This document shows, one piece after another, positions 37,509 to 51,838 of a DNA stretch of 64,000 nt. Below the pieces are notes generated by a model. It saw only the letters and a program-made list of their open reading frames with translations. It was not told the DNA's origin and made no database searches. Origin of the DNA: Oculina patagonica (lineage: Eukaryota); the NCBI RefSeq assembly GCF_052425735.1, contig NC_135760.1:21204001-21268000 (forward strand). The letters are read 5' to 3'. Every line of letters starts with the position of its first letter. The stretch's first letter is position 1. Made by a program: the position numbers and the translations under genes.

Positions 37509-38581
37509 TGTAAAAGATGAAGAGATGATACGATATGAGATCTATCAAATCATCACATTCGTCTTCATGCATGTTCATGGTGACACAGATACATACTAGT
37601 TATAACTTATAGACTATAGATGTCTACAATTCCACACCTGTAAATAGCTTTGCACTATTTTATTATGGTCATGGGGAATGCTTATTATAATATAGAATTC
37701 ATGTTGTAAAATAAAATTTAAGCAAGTTGAAAGTAAGACATCTTTTTACTTTTTGTATTGGCACAAAAAACATGCCAAGTCTCAAAGCATTTTTTGCCTG
37801 TTAGGAAAGTGAAAGTTAAATAAGCCTGGCAAGAAAAGACATAAGTCTTGTCACTTTGTCACTCGCTTTTCCCCACTTTGTGGTTTGTATTTGAGAATTA
37901 GAAATGCGGAAACCGCTAGAACCAGGGAATCATGACGCCTAATTTTGCTGTAATAATTCTATTAGGTCAAGTTTAAACAAGGCACTATTCTTGCTCTTAT
38001 TTCCATGTCAAATGCAATTAATTAAATCTTTGTATCAACATGATGCTAGTAATGGTTGTAGAGTACTTGTTATGCAAGTGTGGTTTGATGCTACTTGTAA
38101 TGCTGAACTTGCTAACATTCAAGGCCGAAGTAGGAATAGTTGTATTGTTGGGGTTTTTTAAATATCTGAATATGGCTTTAGTGTGCTGGATTAAAAAAAA
38201 TATGATTTTTGACTCAACTGCATGTGAGGTTGATCTTAAGCTGGTGCTTTAAGATCTTTTTAAGCGTCTACCCTGATTTATACATTTATTACATTGTGCT
38301 TGATTACAACCATAGTAATTGTATCAGTTGCTTTTGTTTTGTATATTACGTATTTAATATCATTGCGATGGTAAATTAATAAAAGAGTGGGAAGAAGTTA
38401 CGAAAATAAAGTTAAACAAGAAATTCCTTGAAGTATTCGTTAATGATTAGACCAAACGAACAGACATGACACTATCTAGAGATATTTTATACATATCAGT
38501 AAATTATAGTCTGGTATCTACAGCCCCTTTGTATTTATAAAAAAGAAAGAAAGAAAAAAAAAAAACAATAATCAAGTTATG

Positions 38582-38654
38582 AAAAACAAAACGTTTTCGA
38601 CTCGAAGGTCATCATAAGTGATGATGACCTTCGAGTCGAAAACGTTTTGTTTTT
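38582..38654. repeat. Perfect hairpin, 34-bp arms and 5-nt loop
   Basis: AAAAACAAAACGTTTTCGACTCGAAGGTCATCAT-AAGTG-ATGATGACCTTCGAGTCGAAAACGTTTTGTTTTT. Confidence 0.9.
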
Positions 38655-40208
38655 AAAAACTTTATAACTTTTATCCCTTTTTTAGCCTTTTTAAAATTAT
38701 TTTATGAGCAACATTATGACAACAAGTTGTGAAACTTTATTAAAAAGTGAGAAGGGACACGCCCTAAAAGTTTGGTTTGATAACTGGTAATAAAGCGTGT
38801 GTTGTTGATCATAGAACACTAATCCAGGATTAAAAGTTAACTAAGGTTTAATTTCTCTTATACAAAAGTGTTTTTTTTTTGCTAATATGTTGTGGAGTTT
38901 GAGATAAGTTGACATCAAAACTGAAGGACAAAAAATATGAACAGAAAACCGGACTGAAAAGTAATAAAATTGAAATAAAAATTCATGCTTAGATTAGCTT
39001 ATAAATCGTTCTAAGGACGACCTGGCTCTGAACTTCGAGGCTTGAATGTTCATTAAGCGACAGTCCACCGATGGAGGACTTTATAAGGCGCGGCAAATCG
39101 AGGAAACGTTTCCATAAGTGTTTCCTCGTTTTACATGGTTCCATGCAGCGCGGAAACACGGAATGTTTCTACGAGAAGCAGAAGCAAATTTTGCTTCTTG
39201 GAGACGAAAATTAGCTCTGGAAACATGCTTCCAGTATGGCAAAATTGGGAATCATGCGCGCGTTACGAATGTTTCTGGAATTATGTTTTCTTCTTTTTCT
39301 TTAGACGTGCCGTGTTTATTAAGCGCATATCGATACGGACCCACCGTCTATTTAGAGTTACATATTTGCCATTTTGCTTTGCCTCCTTATTTGACCGCGC
39401 TTTCTATGTGATCAGTCTATGAGGGGCCTGATGGGGTAAACTGCAGGTACTGGGATTTGCCTATTTTTTCACTTGAAAAATGATACTTGGGCAAGAAAAC
39501 ACAGAAAAGGCGCTGGGAAATGAGCGCTGAACACCGCATTAACAAACAAACAAAATTCGGCAAATATCGCAAAAATTCCGAAAATACTGCAATTTCATAG
39601 TAAGCTACCATAGAGGCGGATTCATTGACCCGAGGGCAAAAAACGAGGCGAGAACGAGTGGCGGGACCGCGGAAGCAATGACACGACTTTTAACTGGTTG
39701 TCAAAACAGTAAATTTGCGGATTAAAATGTTTGACAAAATATAGGCTGTTTTAGCTTGCTTCCGAAACAACCAGAAACTTCTAAAAATGGTCGGGAAACC
39801 CTAAGAAAACGCATCTCGTATGTTTGGAGAATACCGCAATTAATGATTAAAATTACCGAAATACCGCATGAAAAATTTGCCAATATCGCAAACCCCAATG
39901 TCCTCTTGTAGCATGAAGGAAATTGTTACTTCGAAATTGGATTCAATGGAAAGGAATGCTAATCATTCGCAGGTTATGAGAAAATATAGGCAAATGAGTC
40001 TATCAAATCAGTTTGTTAAAATACTACTTGTATTTCTCGAAAGAACTTTGAAAAAACCTTAAATACAATTGCAGTTCTACTTGATAATATGGTGCTAACA
40101 TTTCAAAAAAAGCCGTAAAATCAGCTTAGAAAATCCTTCAGAGTTTTGGAGTGCGTAGAGTTGGTATGTTATGTTCTGTGTGTACATGAAATTGTTTGAG
40201 ATTACTTT

Positions 40209-40446
40209 TCACCTTTGTGAAATCGATCTGTGGTGCTTAGACAGAGCACGGAAGACGCGAAACACCTTTTCGCATTGCATATAGTGATCTGGCCTTTGAC
40301 CTGTGTGAGTGCGGAGGTGCATAGTCAGATGACTAAAGGTGTTGAACGCCTTGTTACATTGCGAACACTAATATGGCTTTTTGCCTGTGTGAGTACGGAG
40401 GTGTGCGGTCAGATGACTAAGCTGGTTAAACGCCTTGTTACATTGA

Positions 40447-40478
<32 letters not shown>

Positions 40479-40530
40479 ACGGAGGTGCGTGGTCAGATGA
40501 TGAGGCATGTTAAACGCCTTGTTACATTGA

Positions 40531-40562
<32 letters not shown>

Positions 40563-40614
40563 GCGGAGGTGCGAAGTCAGATTACTAAGCTGGTTAAACG
40601 CCTTGTTGCAATGA

Positions 40615-40646
<32 letters not shown>

Positions 40647-40698
40647 ACGGACGTGTCTGGTCAGATCAATATACTGCTTAAACGCCTTGTTGCAATGA

Positions 40699-40730
<32 letters not shown>

Positions 40731-40782
40731 ACGGAGGTGGCTGGTCAGACTGTGGAGCATGTTAAACGCTTTGTTACATTGA

Positions 40783-40814
<32 letters not shown>

Positions 40815-40866
40815 ACGGAGGTGCGAAGTCAGATTACCAAGTTGGCTAAACGCCTTGTTACATTGA

Positions 40867-40898
<32 letters not shown>

Positions 40899-43800
40899 AC
40901 GGAGGTGCTTGGTCAGATGTTCAAGCCGGTTAAACGCCTTGTTACATTGAGTACACTGATATGGCTTTTCACCTGTGTGCGTACGGAGGTGTCGGGTCAG
41001 ATCACCAAGCCGGTTAAACGCCTTGTTACATTGAGTACACTGAGATGGCTTTTCGCCTGTGTGAGTACGGAGGTGCTTGGTCAGATGAATTCCCTGGTTA
41101 AATGCCGTGTCACACTGTGTATACTTGTATTGCTTTTCTCCACTGTGACTTCGAAGGTGTGTGGCTAGAGACCTAGCGTCGCTAAACGCTTCACTACATT
41201 GCGTGCACTGGTATTGCTTTTCATCTGCATGAACCTGGTGGATGTGCATGTTAAGATGATTAACTGTCATGAAGTTTTTCTGGCACTTTCAACATTCCCA
41301 GTTTAAATTCCTGGAAGAACAGCGCTTCTTATGTCTTTGAAGAAAGTTTATTGATGTGTACATTCTCTTACAGCCCTCGCATGTGTAGGCATTACCTGAA
41401 AAATAAGTAGCAAATTTCTTTAACAAAAAAAAAAATTGAAAATGTGGAAGCAATCAGAACCGATCATTACAAAAATTGCATTTATTTTTTGCAAATGAGT
41501 GACATTAAATTATATTTGATACCTAAAATGAAATATTCACCCGGAATTTCTTCTTAGCTAAAGAAATTATAGTATCAACTTCAAATCACTCAAACTATCG
41601 GTGTAATAAATTTACAAGTATATATTTTAGTTACTCAAGTCGGCAACTGATATTGCTTTTTGTAGTACGCTTTTCTGATAGGTTACTGAAATCAGGTAGC
41701 TTACGAGTAATTATTGAAAATGGTTCGCCTCGATTGATTTCAACCCCGATACAGTAATATCGTAAAAATTCCAAATCACCTTAACCAGCGCCTTGTTCTC
41801 TCTTGTGTGTAATCGAAAGTAAATGGCTAGGACGGAGTTACGTGTACAAATGTCCCACCTTATGCATGCCCCCTATCTATAACCCCCCCCCCCCCCGGCT
41901 ATAAGGTTCTACCGTTGTGTGCCCTAACCTGCGATCAGGCGTTTTGTTTTTCTCTTTCCACCCCCGCGAAAAAATGAACGCCTAATCACAGGCTAGTGTG
42001 GCCCCAGCACTTTGCTCTGACGAAACTTTTACGAAGGGCTGACGTTCTACACGTCAGCTTTTCAAAATTTGCCAGGGCGGTTTATTTACCACTATCAACT
42101 GCAGCCAGTTGATAATCAACTAAGTGCTCTACTTGCCCATTGACGCATCACAAAAGTTTATTTAACTTTGTCTAGAAAAACAAATTCCACTTATGACGGC
42201 CCAATGACTAGTTGTGTCTACGAGACACGTCTGCAGGTAATCATGGTACAGTCAACTCTCTCTAAGACGGACACCGTCGGGACCGGCCCCAACTGTCCGT
42301 CTTAGAGAGGTGTCCGTTTTATAGAGAGTCGAAGTAACCTGACACCAGAAATTTTGAGATGATAAAGCTGAACGGCTATGCACAACGGATACACGTCTGT
42401 TTTAATTCGCTTACTTTAGCAAAACCTATAAAGTGGAGCAAAAATAGTATCAGAAATCGACTCATTTGCTCATTACAAACAGTAATACTGTAAGTATAAA
42501 ACTATCTCTTTGGTGCCCATGCGCAGAGAAGTAATACGTTATAGTGGATTGTTTTTGGTAAGTTTGGTATTCTAAAGGCGCTGACTTACTATGATATATG
42601 TCGATACCATGTTTTGAAGTATTATTCACTAAAAAATAACTTTTTGTGCGTGTCCGTTAGCTGTTTCAAGTGTCCGTTGTCCGTCTTAGAGAGGTGTCCG
42701 TCTTACAGAGAGTTTTGGTACAGTAAAATGACTGAAAAACGGCAGGGACCATCACCAGGTGTCCGTCTTATGGAGGTGTCCGTCTTATACAGGTGTCCGT
42801 TAAGAGAGAGTTGACTGTAGTTGTTATTAGCACAATAGATCTACGACTTTGCAAAGTCGAATACAGCTACCAAGATTCGCCTGCATTCGCCTGCTGTTTG
42901 TGAATCTAAAGTAAAAAATTTAAGTGAGAAAAGGCTTTTGATATTATCGATTTACCTTTTCTTTCGTTTGCTTGGTCATCAAAGAGAGAGATCCCCAAAT
43001 CTTTAGCGTAACTCTCTCCATACCATACTAGCAGTTCTTTTCCTGGGTTTACAGGCTTGTAAGTTCTGTAGTAGATCTCGCCTCTAAACTGATAGGCTAC
43101 CAAGTTCTGTTCGTCCTCGCAACGAGAGCAATTTACAAAGCGCATCCAGTTACTCTCATTTTCATCTCGACCATCCACGAAATGACTGAACTTGCCATCT
43201 TTAACAATCTATAAATTAAGTAAAAGTTTAACTGTTTCGATAAACCTTGTAAACGGTTTAGGTATTTTCATAAGGCTTGCCGGTGCATTCTAAGTTCTTA
43301 TTCTTCTCGACTGTTGACATGAAGCAAAATATAACATTAAAACTAAAAAAATTATGAGGTGCATTATGTTCTACATTATGATATTAACAGACCAGTGCAT
43401 GCAACTGGCACAAGATGTTGCTAGCTTAAGGACTGCAATGGCAATGGAGGAGTGGGAAGCAATATTCGTTATCGCCTTTGTGCTACAGAAACCACTTCAC
43501 GCTACTGGAAGATCCAGGCGCTGGGTCTACGGCTTCCTTGGCTTGAATGCGGACTTACTCTTTATCTTATGTTACTGTTTATCTTACCAACTTGCAGCCC
43601 TTTTGATAAATTCATACGCTCGTGCGTCTCATATTGCTTATTACAATTCATTGGCAATTAATAAACAATCATGACAAATAGTAAAGAAGTTATAACTGAA
43701 TAAAATCGAGAGCCAAAACGACGATGTCGGATCAGTGTGAAAGAGTCAAAGACCCCATATAAATGTTCGCAGTAAGGAAACCGTATATAATCACAAGACT

Positions 43801-46669
43801 GGACAAGTGACAAAAAGAGTGTTATTTGAAAAATAGACATTCTCTGCTGGACTAGGAGTGCCTCCAACGTTAATATACATGTAACTATCGTCTGGATCGT
43901 TATCTTTTTTTTAATACACTACCTCCCACATGTAACTTGTATTTGTTTTATCTGTTATATGCTGCCATCCTATCTTTTTTCCTTTATATGGACCAAATCG
44001 TACTCCTTTTGGAATTTCTGCTGTACTGAAAACGCCTAAACCTGCTCCAGGAATTGAAGAATTGCTTCTTTCAAGGACTGTGGGTAGTGAAGCCACTGCG
44101 GAGGACAAGTTAGAATTTCCCTCCTGAGTTCTGTCTTCTATGATTTGCAAAGGCCCATGTACTGGACAATCACCATAGTGGAGGTCTTGACATTCTTCAC
44201 AGACTAAAAGGTGCGATAATAATTGAAATTTTAAAAAGAATTGTTCAACAAAATATTGCTCCCGAACAAAACCAAACGTATTTTACAAGTAAAGTAAAGA
44301 CATTCTTAGCCTATCCGCGAATGTTCGCTATATCCGCGTTTTTGAGCAAAAAAGCAAGTTGCACTCATCGTCTATAAACTTACAGATGTAGTGGTCATCA
44401 TCGGGAACTTCAGCCTCGCAGTAGGAATGCTTTTTTCCTCGAGTAGCGTACTGAGTACGTTGCTCTGTTGACTTTTTCTTTCCACTTTTTGCCCCTTGCT
44501 TTCCAGAGATCGATTCTTTTTCTACTAAATTGAAGTCCAGTTCTTCTCCCAATCTACCAAGCTCATCAAATGCGCTAGAGTCATTCTCTTCGTTCTCCAC
44601 CTGTATCGTAAACCACAGGAAAACAACTGAACCAGAAAATTAAAGAACTGGTGGCTCGTAATGGTTTATATATTAAAGAGGTTTTACCAATAAACAAATT
44701 TAAGTCACCGTGATGTCAAAAATCGTTGCCATAGCAACGTCCAAAGTGGTCAAAGATACCTTATATTTGACTTTGGAGGCTAAAATCTCAAAAACTAGAC
44801 GGTGAAATGTTTTTGTTTTTCATATATCACAATGACCTCAATTTGTTCATTTGTAAAACTTGCACAAGGTTATACTTAAATATTTTCCTAAACATCATTA
44901 GTACTTTGAAATAAGCTTCACTGAACTTTTTACGACCTAAACAAAAAGTAAAGTGCGACCGCTCTTAAATGCAAAGCAAGGTACGTAGCCCTTTCGATTC
45001 CAGTTAACCTCATTTAGTCACCTCATTTAGACACGAAAGAACACCAATTTTTCTGTATACGAACATTTCTGGCCACTTTACCCCCTCAGTATCGCTCCGC
45101 CCCTTTTTTCCTCCCAACCTCTGTAAGCTGACACTTATGCTTGGTCTTATAACATAATAACGGTGTCTATTTACAGGAGGTCCGGCTCCTTTCTAGCCCG
45201 AGCAAAACACATAATTAAAGAAAATTATCATTATCTAGTTCGTAACTATGCACTGACAAAAAAAAACTAGATAAATCCGTATTTATACGGCGGATAATTA
45301 GAAATTTTAGTTTGAAGAACGCAATCAAAGTGAACTGAAAAAAGTCCATTAAAGCCGGAAAAAGTAGCCAAGAAAATGAACGGGCACCTCGTTCTTTTGC
45401 TCTCAGCTAAAATCAATATTGCAGATAGGGGACACACGTTGCGCGCAATGTTGCAGTCAGAAAGTGTCTCAACGATGTCCAATTAATTTTAGGGTTTAGC
45501 CTCGCGCTTGTGTAAATTAGATCCTTATCATTAAATTATCATTATCTAGTTATCATTATTAAAATTATCATTATCTAGTTCGTAACTATGCACTGACAAA
45601 AAAAAAAAAACTAGATAAATCCGTATTTATACGGCGGATGATTAGAAATTTTAGTTTGAAGAACGCAATCAAAGTGAACTGAAAAAAGTCCATTAAAGCC
45701 GGAAAAAGTAGCCAAGAAAATGAACGGGCACCTCGTTCTTTTGCTCTCAGCTAAAATCAATATTGCAGATAGGGGACACACGTTGCGCGCAATGTTGCAG
45801 TCAGAAAGTGTCTCAACGATGTCCAATTAATTTTAGGGTTTAGCCTCGCGCTTGTGTAAATTAGATCCTGGCATTGCACACAATACGAACACAAACGTTT
45901 AGCAATACAAATATAAACGTCAGTTATAGCTACTTGTAACAGGCAAATTATTATTACCAATTTACTTGGTTCCTTTCTTCCTTTTAGGACAGGGACGGTC
46001 TGAGGTTTTGGTCTAAATTCTGCAAAGGATAGCAACAGTCACCTTTTAACTTCGGAACAAACCATTTCTTGTTCTTATGTGCATTTTCACAAGTATTAAA
46101 CTAGCTGAGCTACCTGGAAGAAAGCGTTTTATCATTTTCTTTCGTTTTCTAACTTCTTCTGATCCTGGAACCCAATCTTCATCACTGTCATCACTGCTTT
46201 CACTTGAACTTTCGCTCTCACGGTCAACGGATAAGGTCTTACGCTTTTTAGCAGGCGTTTTTCGTGGGCGACTTGGGAGTCCAGCTGGAATTGCAGGGAC
46301 AGGAAGTCCTGAAGAATGAGAAAAAACCACAAGTATTTCGTCTTTGCAGATACGTTAGTCAGTTACGTAGTACATTAGTCGAAGTTGTTAATTTGAATTG
46401 CCTTGCCACCAGAAAACTTTTCCCGTACAAATCAGTGAACTCAAAATTCTCATCAGTCTTTCTATCCCTGCATGGCACTTTTTTTTTTGTCCCGGGTTTT
46501 GTATAGTACTATAACTTTAACTGAAAACGCACGCAACAAATTCCATAATGGACGATTGTTTATAGTCTACTAGTTATAAAAAATACTCACCCAGGCTTTT
46601 CATGAATTCATGGTTTCTCTTTATATTTCTCAGTCGCAAAAGCTCGTATTCAGACAATGTTCCACTCAT
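40209..46669 (-). CDS. PRDM9: PRDM9-type histone methyltransferase: partial KRAB, SSXRD, zinc knuckle, PR/SET and C2H2 array, with in-frame stops at 41289-41291 and 40368-40370 (exons 46591-46669, 46114-46308, 45958-46019, 44384-44600, 43923-44203, 42956-43208, 41395 down to 40209)
   Basis: Phase-compatible exons encode [30 protein letters not shown] (KRAB-like), [22 protein letters not shown] (SSXRD), [17 protein letters not shown] (knuckle), [11 protein letters not shown]...FGPYKG...SNWMRFVNC...EQNLVAYQ...IYYRT...[10 protein letters not shown] (SET), followed by a single-exon finger array. Confidence 0.9.
40290..41130 (-). repeat. 84-bp zinc-finger-coding minisatellite (about 10 near-identical units)
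   Basis: Repeating [16 protein letters not shown] framework with near-identical DNA and variation concentrated in the recognition helix. Confidence 0.95.
42249..42817. mobile_element. TA-flanked mariner/pogo-type MITE in a PRDM9 intron
   Basis: TA-CAGTCAACTCTCTCTAA...TTAAGAGAGAGTTGACTG-TA. Confidence 0.85.
45221..45869. repeat. Near-identical tandem duplication of about 305 bp (period about 340 bp) in a PRDM9 intron
   Basis: 45221-45525 is repeated at 45561-45869, which also explains the two nearly identical 71-aa ORFs in the track. Confidence 0.9.
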
Positions 46670-50992: not shown

Positions 50993-51838
50993 TTAGTCAT
51001 CATTAAACAGTCGTGTGAACTTTGTAATACCATTGGGGAGTGGCGCGGAGATATCACAGAGCTTGACACCCGTGCTTGGAAGAGTTTCTACTAAAAGAGA
51101 AACTGGGATCCAATTCAGGTCATCTTGAAATTCTGTGTTGATTTTATGAAATACCATAGTGACCAAACCAGATGATTTGGAACCATCAACAAAAAGACAC
51201 ACTTTCCATTTGTCTTTGTTTACATGGACATTGTTTCTGTGTTTTTCCTCTGCTAATAACTCTGGATCATCACTGGTTCCAGCTCTAGTGGGTTCTGTTA
51301 CATGTATGTTGTATTTATAACCACTAACTTCCACATTTTCTCCAAATTTTCTCCGAAAAGCCTCCTCGCTTTTCAGTTTGGCCCATGCCGCCTTAATAGC
51401 AGACTCCTTCTGTCTCATTTCCTCGGATTTTTCCTCCATGACATTTCCTCCTTCTGCCAAGTCTTTGGGATCTAACTGGAAGACAGTCGCCATTTGAGGC
51501 GAGATAAATGGTGTCTTCTCCAATCCAAGTTGAAGCCGTCCAGTCGCATACAACGTAAAAGTCACCGTAACACAAGACCAAAACACGAAACCACCAGCCA
51601 GGCACAAATATTTGAACACTTTAAAGGTTCTAGATCTCCCAGAAGCTTTCGAAGAAAGCAATCTGACCTGCACGGAAGCCGGCCATCTTGTAAACTGAAG
51701 TTGTGAATTGTCTTTCGCTTTCGTCACGATCGCTCTTGTAACTCCATATTTTGGAATCAAATTAGAGCAAAATTTAGATCTTATGCTAGTAAGGGCAGTT
51801 AAGCTTACTACCCTGGGATGAAACAAAAAGCAAGCCAT
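50993..51838 (-). CDS. Intronless TIM21/COA1-like mitochondrial inner-membrane protein
   Basis: First ATG at 51838. Basic, Ser/Arg-rich presequence-like N-terminus, one TM segment (YLCLAGGFVFWSCVTVTFTLYA), then AWAKLKSEEAFRRKFGENV...CLFVDGSKSSGLV...SLLVE, a pattern similar to the Tim21 intermembrane-space domain. Confidence 0.65.
   Translation of the reverse strand: MACFLFHPRVVSLTALTSIRSKFCSNLIPKYGVTRAIVTKAKDNSQLQFTRWPASVQVRLLSSKASGRSRTFKVFKYLCLAGGFVFWSCVTVTFTLYATGRLQLGLEKTPFISPQMATVFQLDPKDLAEGGNVMEEKSEEMRQKESAIKAAWAKLKSEEAFRRKFGENVEVSGYKYNIHVTEPTRAGTSDDPELLAEEKHRNNVHVNKDKWKVCLFVDGSKSSGLVTMVFHKINTEFQDDLNWIPVSLLVETLPSTGVKLCDISAPLPNGITKFTRLFNDD

What the first reader, a model, noticed from the sequence alone, without database searches (positions are those of the whole stretch)
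41289..41291. PRDM9 is cut off from its DNA-binding array by an in-frame TGA (PRDM7-like truncation)
Seen: the last exon reads ...[19 protein letters not shown], a stop inside the finger just before the array. A second stop (TAG for CAG, 40368-40370) precedes another well-formed finger, and one finger has a C>Y change. The six upstream exons are open and the SET tyrosines (FGPY, IYYR, VWYG) are intact. Known: PRDM9 positions recombination hotspots through the array, primate PRDM7 lost its array, and last-exon stops usually escape NMD. Inference: a recent null allele, or a methyltransferase of about 400 aa without sequence specificity.
Basis: partly seen in the sequence, partly recalled or inferred. 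Interest (0 to 1): 0.7.

Follow-up and report, generated by a model that had tools for sequence, protein, structure and literature searches.

The report
Coral PRDM9 gene with premature stop
In this stony-coral (Oculina patagonica) assembly, a single G-to-T change puts a stop codon just ahead of the DNA-reading zinc-finger array of PRDM9, the gene that positions meiotic recombination hotspots in vertebrates and is presumed to in cnidarians; the change looks real and recent, but it rests on one assembly.

Summary
On the minus strand, seven GT-AG exons (46669..41289) splice into a 397-codon reading frame that ends at TGA 41291-41289. This frame is letter-for-letter RefSeq XP_078361042.1, "PRDM9-like [Oculina patagonica]".

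- **The stop:** it lies between the two cysteines of the second finger after the SET domain. Two syntenic coral orthologues read GGA (Gly) there, so it is a derived G>T change.
- **Downstream sequence:** 306 codons stay open. They hold eight canonical 84-bp fingers whose variation sits at the DNA-contact residues (PoD 0.61), the PRDM9 hallmark. The stop is therefore young, roughly under 2% neutral divergence.
- **The other two "decay" marks do not hold up:** the C>Y finger is already degenerate in every relative, and stops inside the array followed by relic fingers also occur in the related corals.
- **Best reading (about 0.6):** a real, recent loss-of-targeting allele that gives a PRDM7-like protein (KRAB-like, SSXRD, SET, one finger).
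- **Not excluded:** a consensus error or somatic change; rescue by a downstream in-phase acceptor, as used by GenBank model KAL9981619.1; an intact paralogue elsewhere in the genome.
- **Context:** a 2026 preprint found an intact PRDM9 in all 28 cnidarians it surveyed, and O. patagonica was not among them.

I could not reach any reads or population data.

The parts
46591..46669 (-). Coding exon 1: start codon and KRAB-like motif ([27 protein letters not shown])
   Evidence: Exact splice reconstruction of XP_078361042.1. The motif aligns to the second half of the Pfam KRAB match in shark and newt PRDM9/7. The Pfam KRAB model itself does not hit it.
46114..46308 (-). Coding exon 2: basic/acidic linker (..[11 protein letters not shown]..)
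   Evidence: Conserved in L005, L001 and L002.
45958..46019 (-). Coding exon 3 (62 nt)
44384..44600 (-). Coding exon 4: SSXRD-like segment (..[22 protein letters not shown])
   Evidence: It aligns over the Pfam SSXRD match of shark PRDM7-like P0145 and to sea-urchin and Nematostella PRDM9-like proteins.
43923..44203 (-). Coding exon 5: zinc knuckle and first half of PR/SET (FGPY tyrosine)
   Evidence: Pfam PRDM2_PR at 2.8e-09 on the exon alone.
42956..43208 (-). Coding exon 6: second half of PR/SET (IYYR and VWYG tyrosines)
   Evidence: Pfam PRDM2_PR at 8.8e-32 and SET at 2.5e-09.
41292..41395 (-). Last exon up to the stop: conserved acceptor, post-SET C2HC finger ZF1 (first Cys codon at 41381) and the first Cys of ZF2
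   Evidence: ZF1 aligns with the post-SET finger of newt PRDM9.
41289..41291 (-). In-frame TGA between the two Cys ligands of ZF2; it is the annotated stop of RefSeq XP_078361042.1
   Evidence: Orthologues read GGA (L001), Gly (L005), AAT (L002/L003) or Lys (Desmophyllum P0184).
41046..41288 (-). Rest of ZF2, ZF3, and the anciently degenerate ZF4 (Y in place of the first Cys)
   Evidence: ZF1-ZF2 are conserved as far as Nematostella and Xenia.
40374..41045 (-). Eight canonical 84-bp C2H2 units (the array proper), all in frame
   Evidence: TRF finds period 84 and 11.2 copies. PoD is 0.61; contact codons have pN 0.53 against non-contact pN 0.04 and pS 0.13.
40368..40370 (-). TAG in place of the linker CAG (PY*C); it ends the array ORF
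   Evidence: L002/L003 carry TAG at the same linker position within their arrays.
40212..40367 (-). Relic tail after the TAG: one well-formed finger and one degenerate terminal finger, then TGA at 40211-40209
41224..41226 (-). Downstream in-phase AG acceptor (..ttcatgcag|AT..) that GenBank model KAL9981619.1 uses to skip ZF1, ZF2 and the TGA
   Evidence: P0268 reads ..ANERK-DEKQYQC... Its pyrimidine tract is weaker (10/18) than that of the RefSeq acceptor (14/18).

Best explanation
This is the syntenic Oculina patagonica orthologue of the cnidarian full-length PRDM9 gene (KRAB-like, SSXRD, PR/SET, two conserved post-SET fingers, then an 84-bp minisatellite of C2H2 fingers). In this assembly one G>T transversion has turned a Gly codon (GGA) inside the second post-SET finger into TGA.

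With the conserved splice acceptor, translation stops after residue 397. The product keeps the catalytic SET domain with its three tyrosines and one finger, but has no DNA-reading array. That is the architecture of primate PRDM7.

Shown here: the stop, the frame, the derived state of the stop, and the intact array with PRDM9-type diversity downstream.

Inferred: the mutation is young, so this is a null or loss-of-targeting allele, either still segregating or only recently fixed. The mRNA may escape exon-junction-dependent decay because the stop is in the last exon. The truncated protein could not direct H3K4/H3K36 trimethylation to specific motifs. An animal homozygous for it would have to fall back on PRDM9-independent hotspots or on a paralogue.
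For: - The exact spliced CDS equals RefSeq XP_078361042.1, 397 aa, ending at the TGA.
- The closest relative, L005 (GCA_044670265.1), is collinear across the whole locus including introns and the upstream neighbour (about 77-93% nt in the long blocks, about 90% across the SET exons and introns). It reads Gly at this codon. L001 is also syntenic and reads GGA.
- The acceptor and ZF1-ZF2 are conserved across Anthozoa.
- After the TGA, 306 codons remain open with no frameshift. Eight canonical fingers have diversity concentrated at positions -1, +2, +3 and +6 (PoD 0.61, inside the full-length range of 0.29-1.0 given in preprint 10.64898/2026.09.07.749791).
- 4.2% of substitutions in that ORF would create a stop. 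With an assumed indel rate of 0.1 per substitution, the 95% bound on neutral age is d<0.023, compared with pairwise dS of about 0.12-0.17 to L005.
- On the window's branch, the post-stop fingers show 3 synonymous and 6 nonsynonymous changes against 3 and 8 on the intact L005 branch, so there is no excess.
- Upstream exons have dN/dS of 0.12-0.55.
Against: - Everything rests on one assembly. I found no independent reads, transcripts or second haplotype (searches gave nothing; some searches were flawed).
- A public gene model bypasses the stop through a downstream in-phase acceptor.
- Gene conversion within the minisatellite could keep the array looking intact for longer than the simple age bound allows.
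- Whether other PRDM9 copies exist in this genome is unknown. The word-based protein search listed only this O. patagonica cluster, but it also missed most known coral PRDM9s.
Confidence: 0.6

Rival explanations
1. The T is a consensus or base-call error, or a somatic mutation of the sequenced colony, and the germline gene is an ordinary intact full-length PRDM9.
For: It is a single-base difference from the GGA of two orthologues. Everything else in the gene is intact. All 28 cnidarians surveyed in the preprint have an intact copy. That preprint also reports assembly-dependent PRDM9 calls in Exaiptasia and Pocillopora.
Against: Those assembly artefacts concerned missing or collapsed arrays, not substitutions. 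The stop is not in a homopolymer or inside the repeat. Both the RefSeq and GenBank annotations work from the same base. Substitution errors are rare in chromosome-level assemblies (general knowledge; the sequencing platform is not known to me).
Confidence: 0.15
2. The stop is real but is bypassed. A downstream in-phase 3' splice site (cag|AT at 41225/41224, or acag|TT near 41263) joins SET directly to the array, giving a working PRDM9 that lacks ZF1 and ZF2.
For: GenBank model KAL9981619.1 uses exactly the 41224 junction and runs through the array to the TAG. Both candidate AGs are in phase 1, as the junction needs. An array kept intact fits continued use.
Against: That model comes from a predictor that also fuses the upstream neighbour and drops the KRAB exon, so it is not evidence of transcription. 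The upstream acceptor has the better pyrimidine tract (14/18 against 10/18 and 7/18) and is conserved in four loci. The 41224 site has another AG a few bases upstream. ZF1-ZF2 are conserved across Anthozoa, which suggests they are needed. RefSeq chose the upstream acceptor.
Confidence: 0.12
3. This is a long-standing truncated paralogue with a function of its own (array-less methyltransferase), like the old truncated PRDM9 copies described in cnidarians, while another locus provides the full-length gene.
For: The preprint counts 63 truncated homologues and birth-and-death dynamics in Cnidaria. The SET tyrosines are intact. The upstream exons are under purifying selection.
Against: The locus is the syntenic counterpart of intact full-length genes in L005 and L001. 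The truncated copies in the preprint lack whole exons rather than carrying a point stop, and a KRAB-bearing form without an array was not accepted there as real. An old stop should have let the array decay, yet PoD is 0.61.
Confidence: 0.05
4. The TGA is decoded, either as selenocysteine or by programmed readthrough, so the full protein is made.
For: None beyond the intact downstream frame.
Against: No SECIS or other Rfam element lies in the 3 kb covering the exon and its 3' side, even at E<=1. Orthologues have Gly, Asn or Lys at this position, not Cys or Sec. The following base is A, which is not the classic leaky context (general knowledge).
Confidence: 0.02

Closest known systems
Full-length cnidarian PRDM9 (Rudler et al. 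2026 preprint, 10.64898/2026.09.07.749791; Oliver et al. 2009 for Nematostella, as cited there)
   Same: Same exon plan (KRAB-like, SSXRD in one exon, PR/SET in two exons, fingers in one last exon). Three catalytic tyrosines. A minisatellite array with diversity at the DNA-contact residues. Syntenic with intact genes in two other corals.
   Different: A point nonsense codon separates SET from the array. The preprint kept only candidates without internal stops and found an intact copy in all 28 species. O. patagonica was not sampled.
Primate PRDM7
   Same: Predicted product has a KRAB-type N-terminus, SSXRD, PR/SET and the post-SET finger but no long array, and is about 400-500 aa (architecture only; the PRDM7 facts are from general knowledge).
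   Different: PRDM7 is a duplicate that coexists with an intact PRDM9 and has changed catalytic properties. Here the truncated locus is the syntenic orthologue itself, the tyrosines are unchanged, and the array is still present and intact downstream of the stop.
Truncated PRDM9 homologues and PRDM9 losses (Baker et al. 2017, PMC5519329; truncated cnidarian classes in the 2026 preprint)
   Same: Loss of one of the four domains, which in vertebrates goes with loss of PRDM9-directed hotspots and with slower finger evolution.
   Different: The known cnidarian truncations remove whole exons at the 5' or 3' end and show lower contact-residue diversity. Here no exon is missing and PoD is in the full-length range, so if this is a loss it is at its very first step.
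RefSeq XP_078361042.1 and GenBank KAL9981619.1 (Oculina patagonica)
   Same: These are the two public models of this very locus. The first is identical to the seven-exon reading and stops at the TGA.
   Different: The second is 795 aa. It fuses the upstream neighbour (51553-51026), omits the KRAB exon, skips the TGA through the 41224 acceptor and ends at the TAG. Neither record flags the stop as unusual.

Membership tests
Full-length ('complete') PRDM9, criteria of Baker et al. 2017 and the 2026 cnidarian preprint | KRAB domain at the N-terminus | tested here: inconclusive
   Pfam KRAB does not hit P0212 even at E<=10. Residues 5-28 do align to the second half of the KRAB match in shark P0145 and newt P0204, and the same start is shared by L005, L001 and a Stylophora-cluster transcript. 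The first half of the box was not found.
Full-length ('complete') PRDM9, criteria of Baker et al. 2017 and the 2026 cnidarian preprint | SSXRD motif between KRAB and SET | tested here: inconclusive
   There is no Pfam SSXRD hit on P0212. However..[21 protein letters not shown] aligns over the SSXRD match of P0145 and the equivalent segments of sea-urchin, Nematostella and newt proteins.
Full-length ('complete') PRDM9, criteria of Baker et al. 2017 and the 2026 cnidarian preprint | PR/SET domain with the three catalytic tyrosines (Y276, Y341, Y357 in mammalian numbering) | tested here: met
   PRDM2_PR at 1.1e-46 and SET at 5.5e-13 on P0212. FGPY, IYYR and VWYG align with the same residues of newt PRDM9.
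Full-length ('complete') PRDM9, criteria of Baker et al. 2017 and the 2026 cnidarian preprint | C2H2 array in the same open reading frame as SET | tested here: not met
   TGA at 41291-41289 ends the frame 35 codons into the last exon under the conserved acceptor. It would be met only under the unverified 41224 acceptor.
Full-length ('complete') PRDM9, criteria of Baker et al. 2017 and the 2026 cnidarian preprint | Array evolving fast at the DNA-contact residues (-1, +2, +3, +6) with the rest homogenised | tested here: met
   PoD is 0.61 over eight canonical fingers. Contact codons have pN 0.53 against non-contact pN 0.04. Contact residues differ from L005 in the first shared array finger.
PRDM7-type array-less paralogue | Arises by duplication and coexists with an intact PRDM9 | not testable with these tools
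   The whole O. patagonica genome could not be searched. The locus itself is the syntenic orthologue, not an extra copy. No second PRDM9-like hit lies in the 64-kb window, and the scan's notes show none.
PRDM7-type array-less paralogue | Array lost or reduced at the DNA level | tested here: not met
   The full array is still present and in frame downstream of the stop.
Selenoprotein (TGA = Sec) | SECIS element in the 3' UTR and Cys/Sec at the homologous position in relatives | tested here: not met
   No SECIS among the Rfam matches at E<=1. Relatives have Gly, Asn or Lys at this position.

The most novel reading that the evidence does not exclude
Oculina patagonica carries the stop at high frequency or fixed and has no intact paralogue. 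It would then be the first cnidarian caught at the first step of losing PRDM9-directed recombination. That would be a natural experiment for testing whether hotspots revert to promoter-like sites, and whether ZCWPW1/ZCWPW2 decay follows, outside vertebrates.
Probability: 0.15. Interest if true: 0.7.

Novelty: new member of a known kind. Interest (0 to 1): 0.4.

Why it matters
PRDM9 loss and truncation are well documented in vertebrates. The only broad cnidarian survey, a 2026 preprint, found an intact full-length copy in every one of 28 species. Its authors state that for this reason they could not test co-evolution with ZCWPW1/2, TEX15, FBXO47 or HELLS.

A coral whose syntenic PRDM9 orthologue carries a fresh nonsense codon ahead of an otherwise pristine, fast-evolving array would be a first candidate for such a loss. 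At the least it would be a segregating null allele in an invertebrate. It is cheap to verify with reads already in existence.

If the T turns out to be heterozygous, rare or an error, the locus is simply one more ordinary full-length cnidarian PRDM9. The two conflicting public gene models also show that annotation of this locus needs transcript evidence.

Tried and rejected
- **Same-species reads or transcripts across the TGA.** An exact look-up of the 300-aa post-stop ORF found nothing. Word-based protein searches with the post-stop fingers found nothing closer than 47% identity. A JGI metagenome scan with a pattern tolerant at the stop base found nothing.
- **Two flawed look-ups.** Searches used ORFs with GTG or TTG starts. 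A reference translates the first codon as V or L, whereas a called gene would begin with M. They carry no weight.
- **A possible independent truncation.** P0224, a 401-aa Logan transcript in the Stylophora cluster, ends near the same spot. Its ORF simply runs off the end of a 1364-nt contig, so this was rejected.
- **A possible array-less parallel in Nematostella.** The 389-aa model XP_048586840.1 reads on into the intron after the SET exon, and an intact finger exon lies about 60 nt downstream. It is an annotation or isoform matter, not a nonsense truncation.
- **Selenocysteine.** Rejected.
- **Branch-wise syn/nonsyn counts to date the stop.** The counts are too small to discriminate.
- **Promoter/terminator scan.** The bacterial-type scan is irrelevant to an animal gene.
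- **Other PRDM9-like loci in this genome.**

Full report
**What is in the sequence**

The gene lies on the minus strand. The window reads ..AAC TGG GAA TGT TGA AAG TGC CAG.., with the TGA at 41291-41289. I searched for exon borders with canonical GT-AG introns. Seven exons (46669-46591, 46308-46114, 46019-45958, 44600-44384, 44203-43923, 43208-42956, 41395-41289) translate exactly to a protein found in the database search. That protein is RefSeq XP_078361042.1, [quoted passage not shown], 397 aa, ending ..SSRNLNWEC.

The SET-to-last-exon junction is phase 1 (G|GT). Its acceptor, ttttcag|GT, is conserved in four coral loci. The window has CpG o/e of 0.88 and 39% GC. At that composition a random frame stays open for 306 codons with probability about 1e-9 (my arithmetic), so the frame after the TGA is real coding sequence.

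**Identity of the gene**

- Pfam finds PRDM2_PR (1.1e-46) and SET (5.5e-13) on the 397-aa product, and ten C2H2 fingers in the post-stop frame.
- The product aligns end to end with newt PRDM9 (E=2e-56). The alignment runs from the KRAB-like N-terminus through the SSXRD segment, the zinc knuckle, SET with FGPY, IYYR and VWYG, and on to the post-SET finger.
- Pfam's KRAB and SSXRD models do not reach the coral sequence. The coral residues do align over the KRAB and SSXRD matches of a shark PRDM7-like protein and to sea-urchin and Nematostella PRDM9-like proteins. I therefore treat KRAB and SSXRD as present by alignment only.

**Anatomy of the last exon**

- ZF1 is a C2HC finger equivalent to the vertebrate post-SET finger.
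- ZF2 is C-x2-C..H-x4-H, and the TGA is the first of the two residues between its cysteines.
- ZF3 follows, then ZF4, which has Y at the first ligand position.
- Eight canonical 84-bp units come next. A unit that starts PY-TAG-C and a degenerate terminal finger close the exon.
- ZF1-ZF2 are conserved in Nematostella and in the octocoral Xenia.

**Relatives**

An exhaustive HMMER search with the second SET exon gave many exon-sized ORFs from coral assemblies. I fetched their contigs.

- **L001** (ENA ERZ25067872) is collinear with the window from the upstream neighbour gene through every exon. It has a 545-codon open last exon reading ..NWEC-G-KCQKKF.., with codon GGA.
- **L005** (NCBI GCA_044670265.1, contig JADOBR010010833.1) is much closer. 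It is collinear with the window across exons, introns and the neighbour gene, at about 77-93% nt in the long blocks and about 90% across the SET exons and their introns. It reads ..NWEC-G-KCQKNF..
- **L002/L003**, from a more distant coral, have Asn at this position. A Desmophyllum protein has Lys.

The TGA is therefore a derived single G>T change at a variable, non-ligand position of a conserved finger.

**The other two "decay" marks**

The first-ligand position of ZF4 is N in L005, Y in L001 and F in Desmophyllum. That finger was already degenerate in the common ancestor.

The TAG is less telling than it looks. L002 and L003 both carry ..GERPY-TAG-C.. inside their arrays, followed by frame-shifted further fingers. 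L001 ends its array through a roughly 10-nt deletion that creates a TGA, again followed by many relic fingers. Arrays capped by an internal stop with relics behind it seem normal in these corals. The Oculina TAG may simply be the working stop of the gene.

**State of the array**

- Across the eight canonical fingers, the share of amino-acid diversity carried by positions -1, +2, +3 and +6 (PoD) is 0.61.
- Contact codons differ at pN 0.53. Non-contact codons differ at pN 0.04 and pS 0.13.
- The 2026 preprint by Rudler et al. gives 0.29-1.0 for full-length cnidarian PRDM9 and lower values for truncated copies.
- For comparison, the relatives give 0.81 (L001) and 0.54 (L003).

**Age of the stop**

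- In the 306-codon frame, 4.2% of all single-base substitutions would create a stop.
- If I assume an indel rate of 0.1 per substitution, an unconstrained frame would stay intact with 5% probability at d=0.023.
- Pairwise dS between the window and L005 is about 0.12-0.17, so the stop is much younger than that split.
- Branch counts polarised with L001 show no excess of changes on the window's branch after the stop: 3 synonymous and 6 nonsynonymous, against 3 and 8 on the L005 branch. The numbers are small.
- Upstream exons have dN/dS of 0.12-0.55.
- Gene conversion among the repeats could stretch the age bound.

**Alternative readings**

GenBank model KAL9981619.1 (795 aa, same chromosome) bypasses the stop. 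It joins ..ANERK to DEKQYQC.. through an in-phase acceptor at 41225/41224 and runs to the TAG. It also fuses the unrelated upstream neighbour (51553-51026) and drops the KRAB exon, which is typical of an ab initio prediction. That acceptor has a poorer pyrimidine tract than the conserved one (10/18 against 14/18).

Selenocysteine has no support. There is no SECIS at E<=1, and relatives have Gly, Asn or Lys at the position.

I could not test a base error, a somatic change or heterozygosity, because no independent O. patagonica reads or transcripts were reachable (two searches were flawed by non-ATG starts). Two apparent parallels dissolved on inspection. A 401-aa coral transcript ends at a contig edge. 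The 389-aa Nematostella model is an intron read-through with an intact finger exon just downstream.

**Context and verdict**

The preprint reports 45 full-length and 63 truncated PRDM9 homologues in 28 cnidarians, with at least one intact full-length copy in each species. Its truncations remove whole exons, and candidates with internal stops were not retained. O. patagonica is not in that set. I found no paper on its PRDM9.

My best reading (0.6) is a real and very recent nonsense allele of the syntenic orthologue. It would encode a PRDM7-like, catalytically equipped but untargeted protein, and so lose hotspot targeting. Whether it is segregating or fixed is unknown. Rivals are error or somatic change (0.15), splice bypass (0.12), an old functional truncated copy (0.05) and recoding (0.02).

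This is a new instance of a known kind of event. It is already visible in the RefSeq annotation but has not been remarked on, and it is worth a quick read-level check because no cnidarian PRDM9 loss is yet known.

Noticed in passing
window 51026-51553 (-): Single-exon ORF of about 176 aa (MATVFQLDPKDL..) just upstream of PRDM9. It is conserved and syntenic in L001 and L005 and has no convincing Pfam domain (DUF5341 at E=0.07 only). GenBank model KAL9981619.1 fuses it to PRDM9.
   Followed up: partly
window 45258-45525 and 45602-45869: Two identical 268-nt direct copies 344 nt apart inside intron 3 of the PRDM9 gene. This is a very recent local duplication or a paired insertion.
   Followed up: partly
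window 38578-38658: A palindromic hairpin of about 80 nt, roughly 1.5 kb downstream of the gene, gives sub-threshold matches to several plant miRNA-precursor models on both strands (best 33.9 bits against a gathering score of 75). It looks like a MITE-type inverted repeat rather than a miRNA.
   Followed up: no
L002 15290-15295 and L003 15100-15105: Two loci of one distant coral assembly (ERZ25067879) share an in-array TAG at the same 'PY-Q-C' linker position as the window's TAG. Both are followed by a 1-nt deletion and about eight more fingers in other frames. This is either recurrent capping of arrays or two haplotigs of one decaying array.
   Followed up: partly
L006 8174-9454 (Nematostella vectensis OW051992.1): RefSeq XP_048586840.1 (389 aa, 'PRDM9-like', no fingers) ends by reading into the intron after the second SET exon. 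An intact finger exon starts about 60 nt further on. It is either a short intron-retention isoform or a mis-annotation of a full-length paralogue.
   Followed up: partly
window about 41883-41900 (-): A run of about 15 G in intron 6 of the gene. This is the kind of homopolymer where assembly errors concentrate, but it is 600 nt away from the stop and outside coding sequence.
   Followed up: no
window 40230-41168 (+): A 312-aa ORF runs antisense to the finger array. The same antisense ORFs were called as 'genes' on the ENA and NCBI contigs of the relatives. They are artefacts of the repeat, not genes.
   Followed up: no
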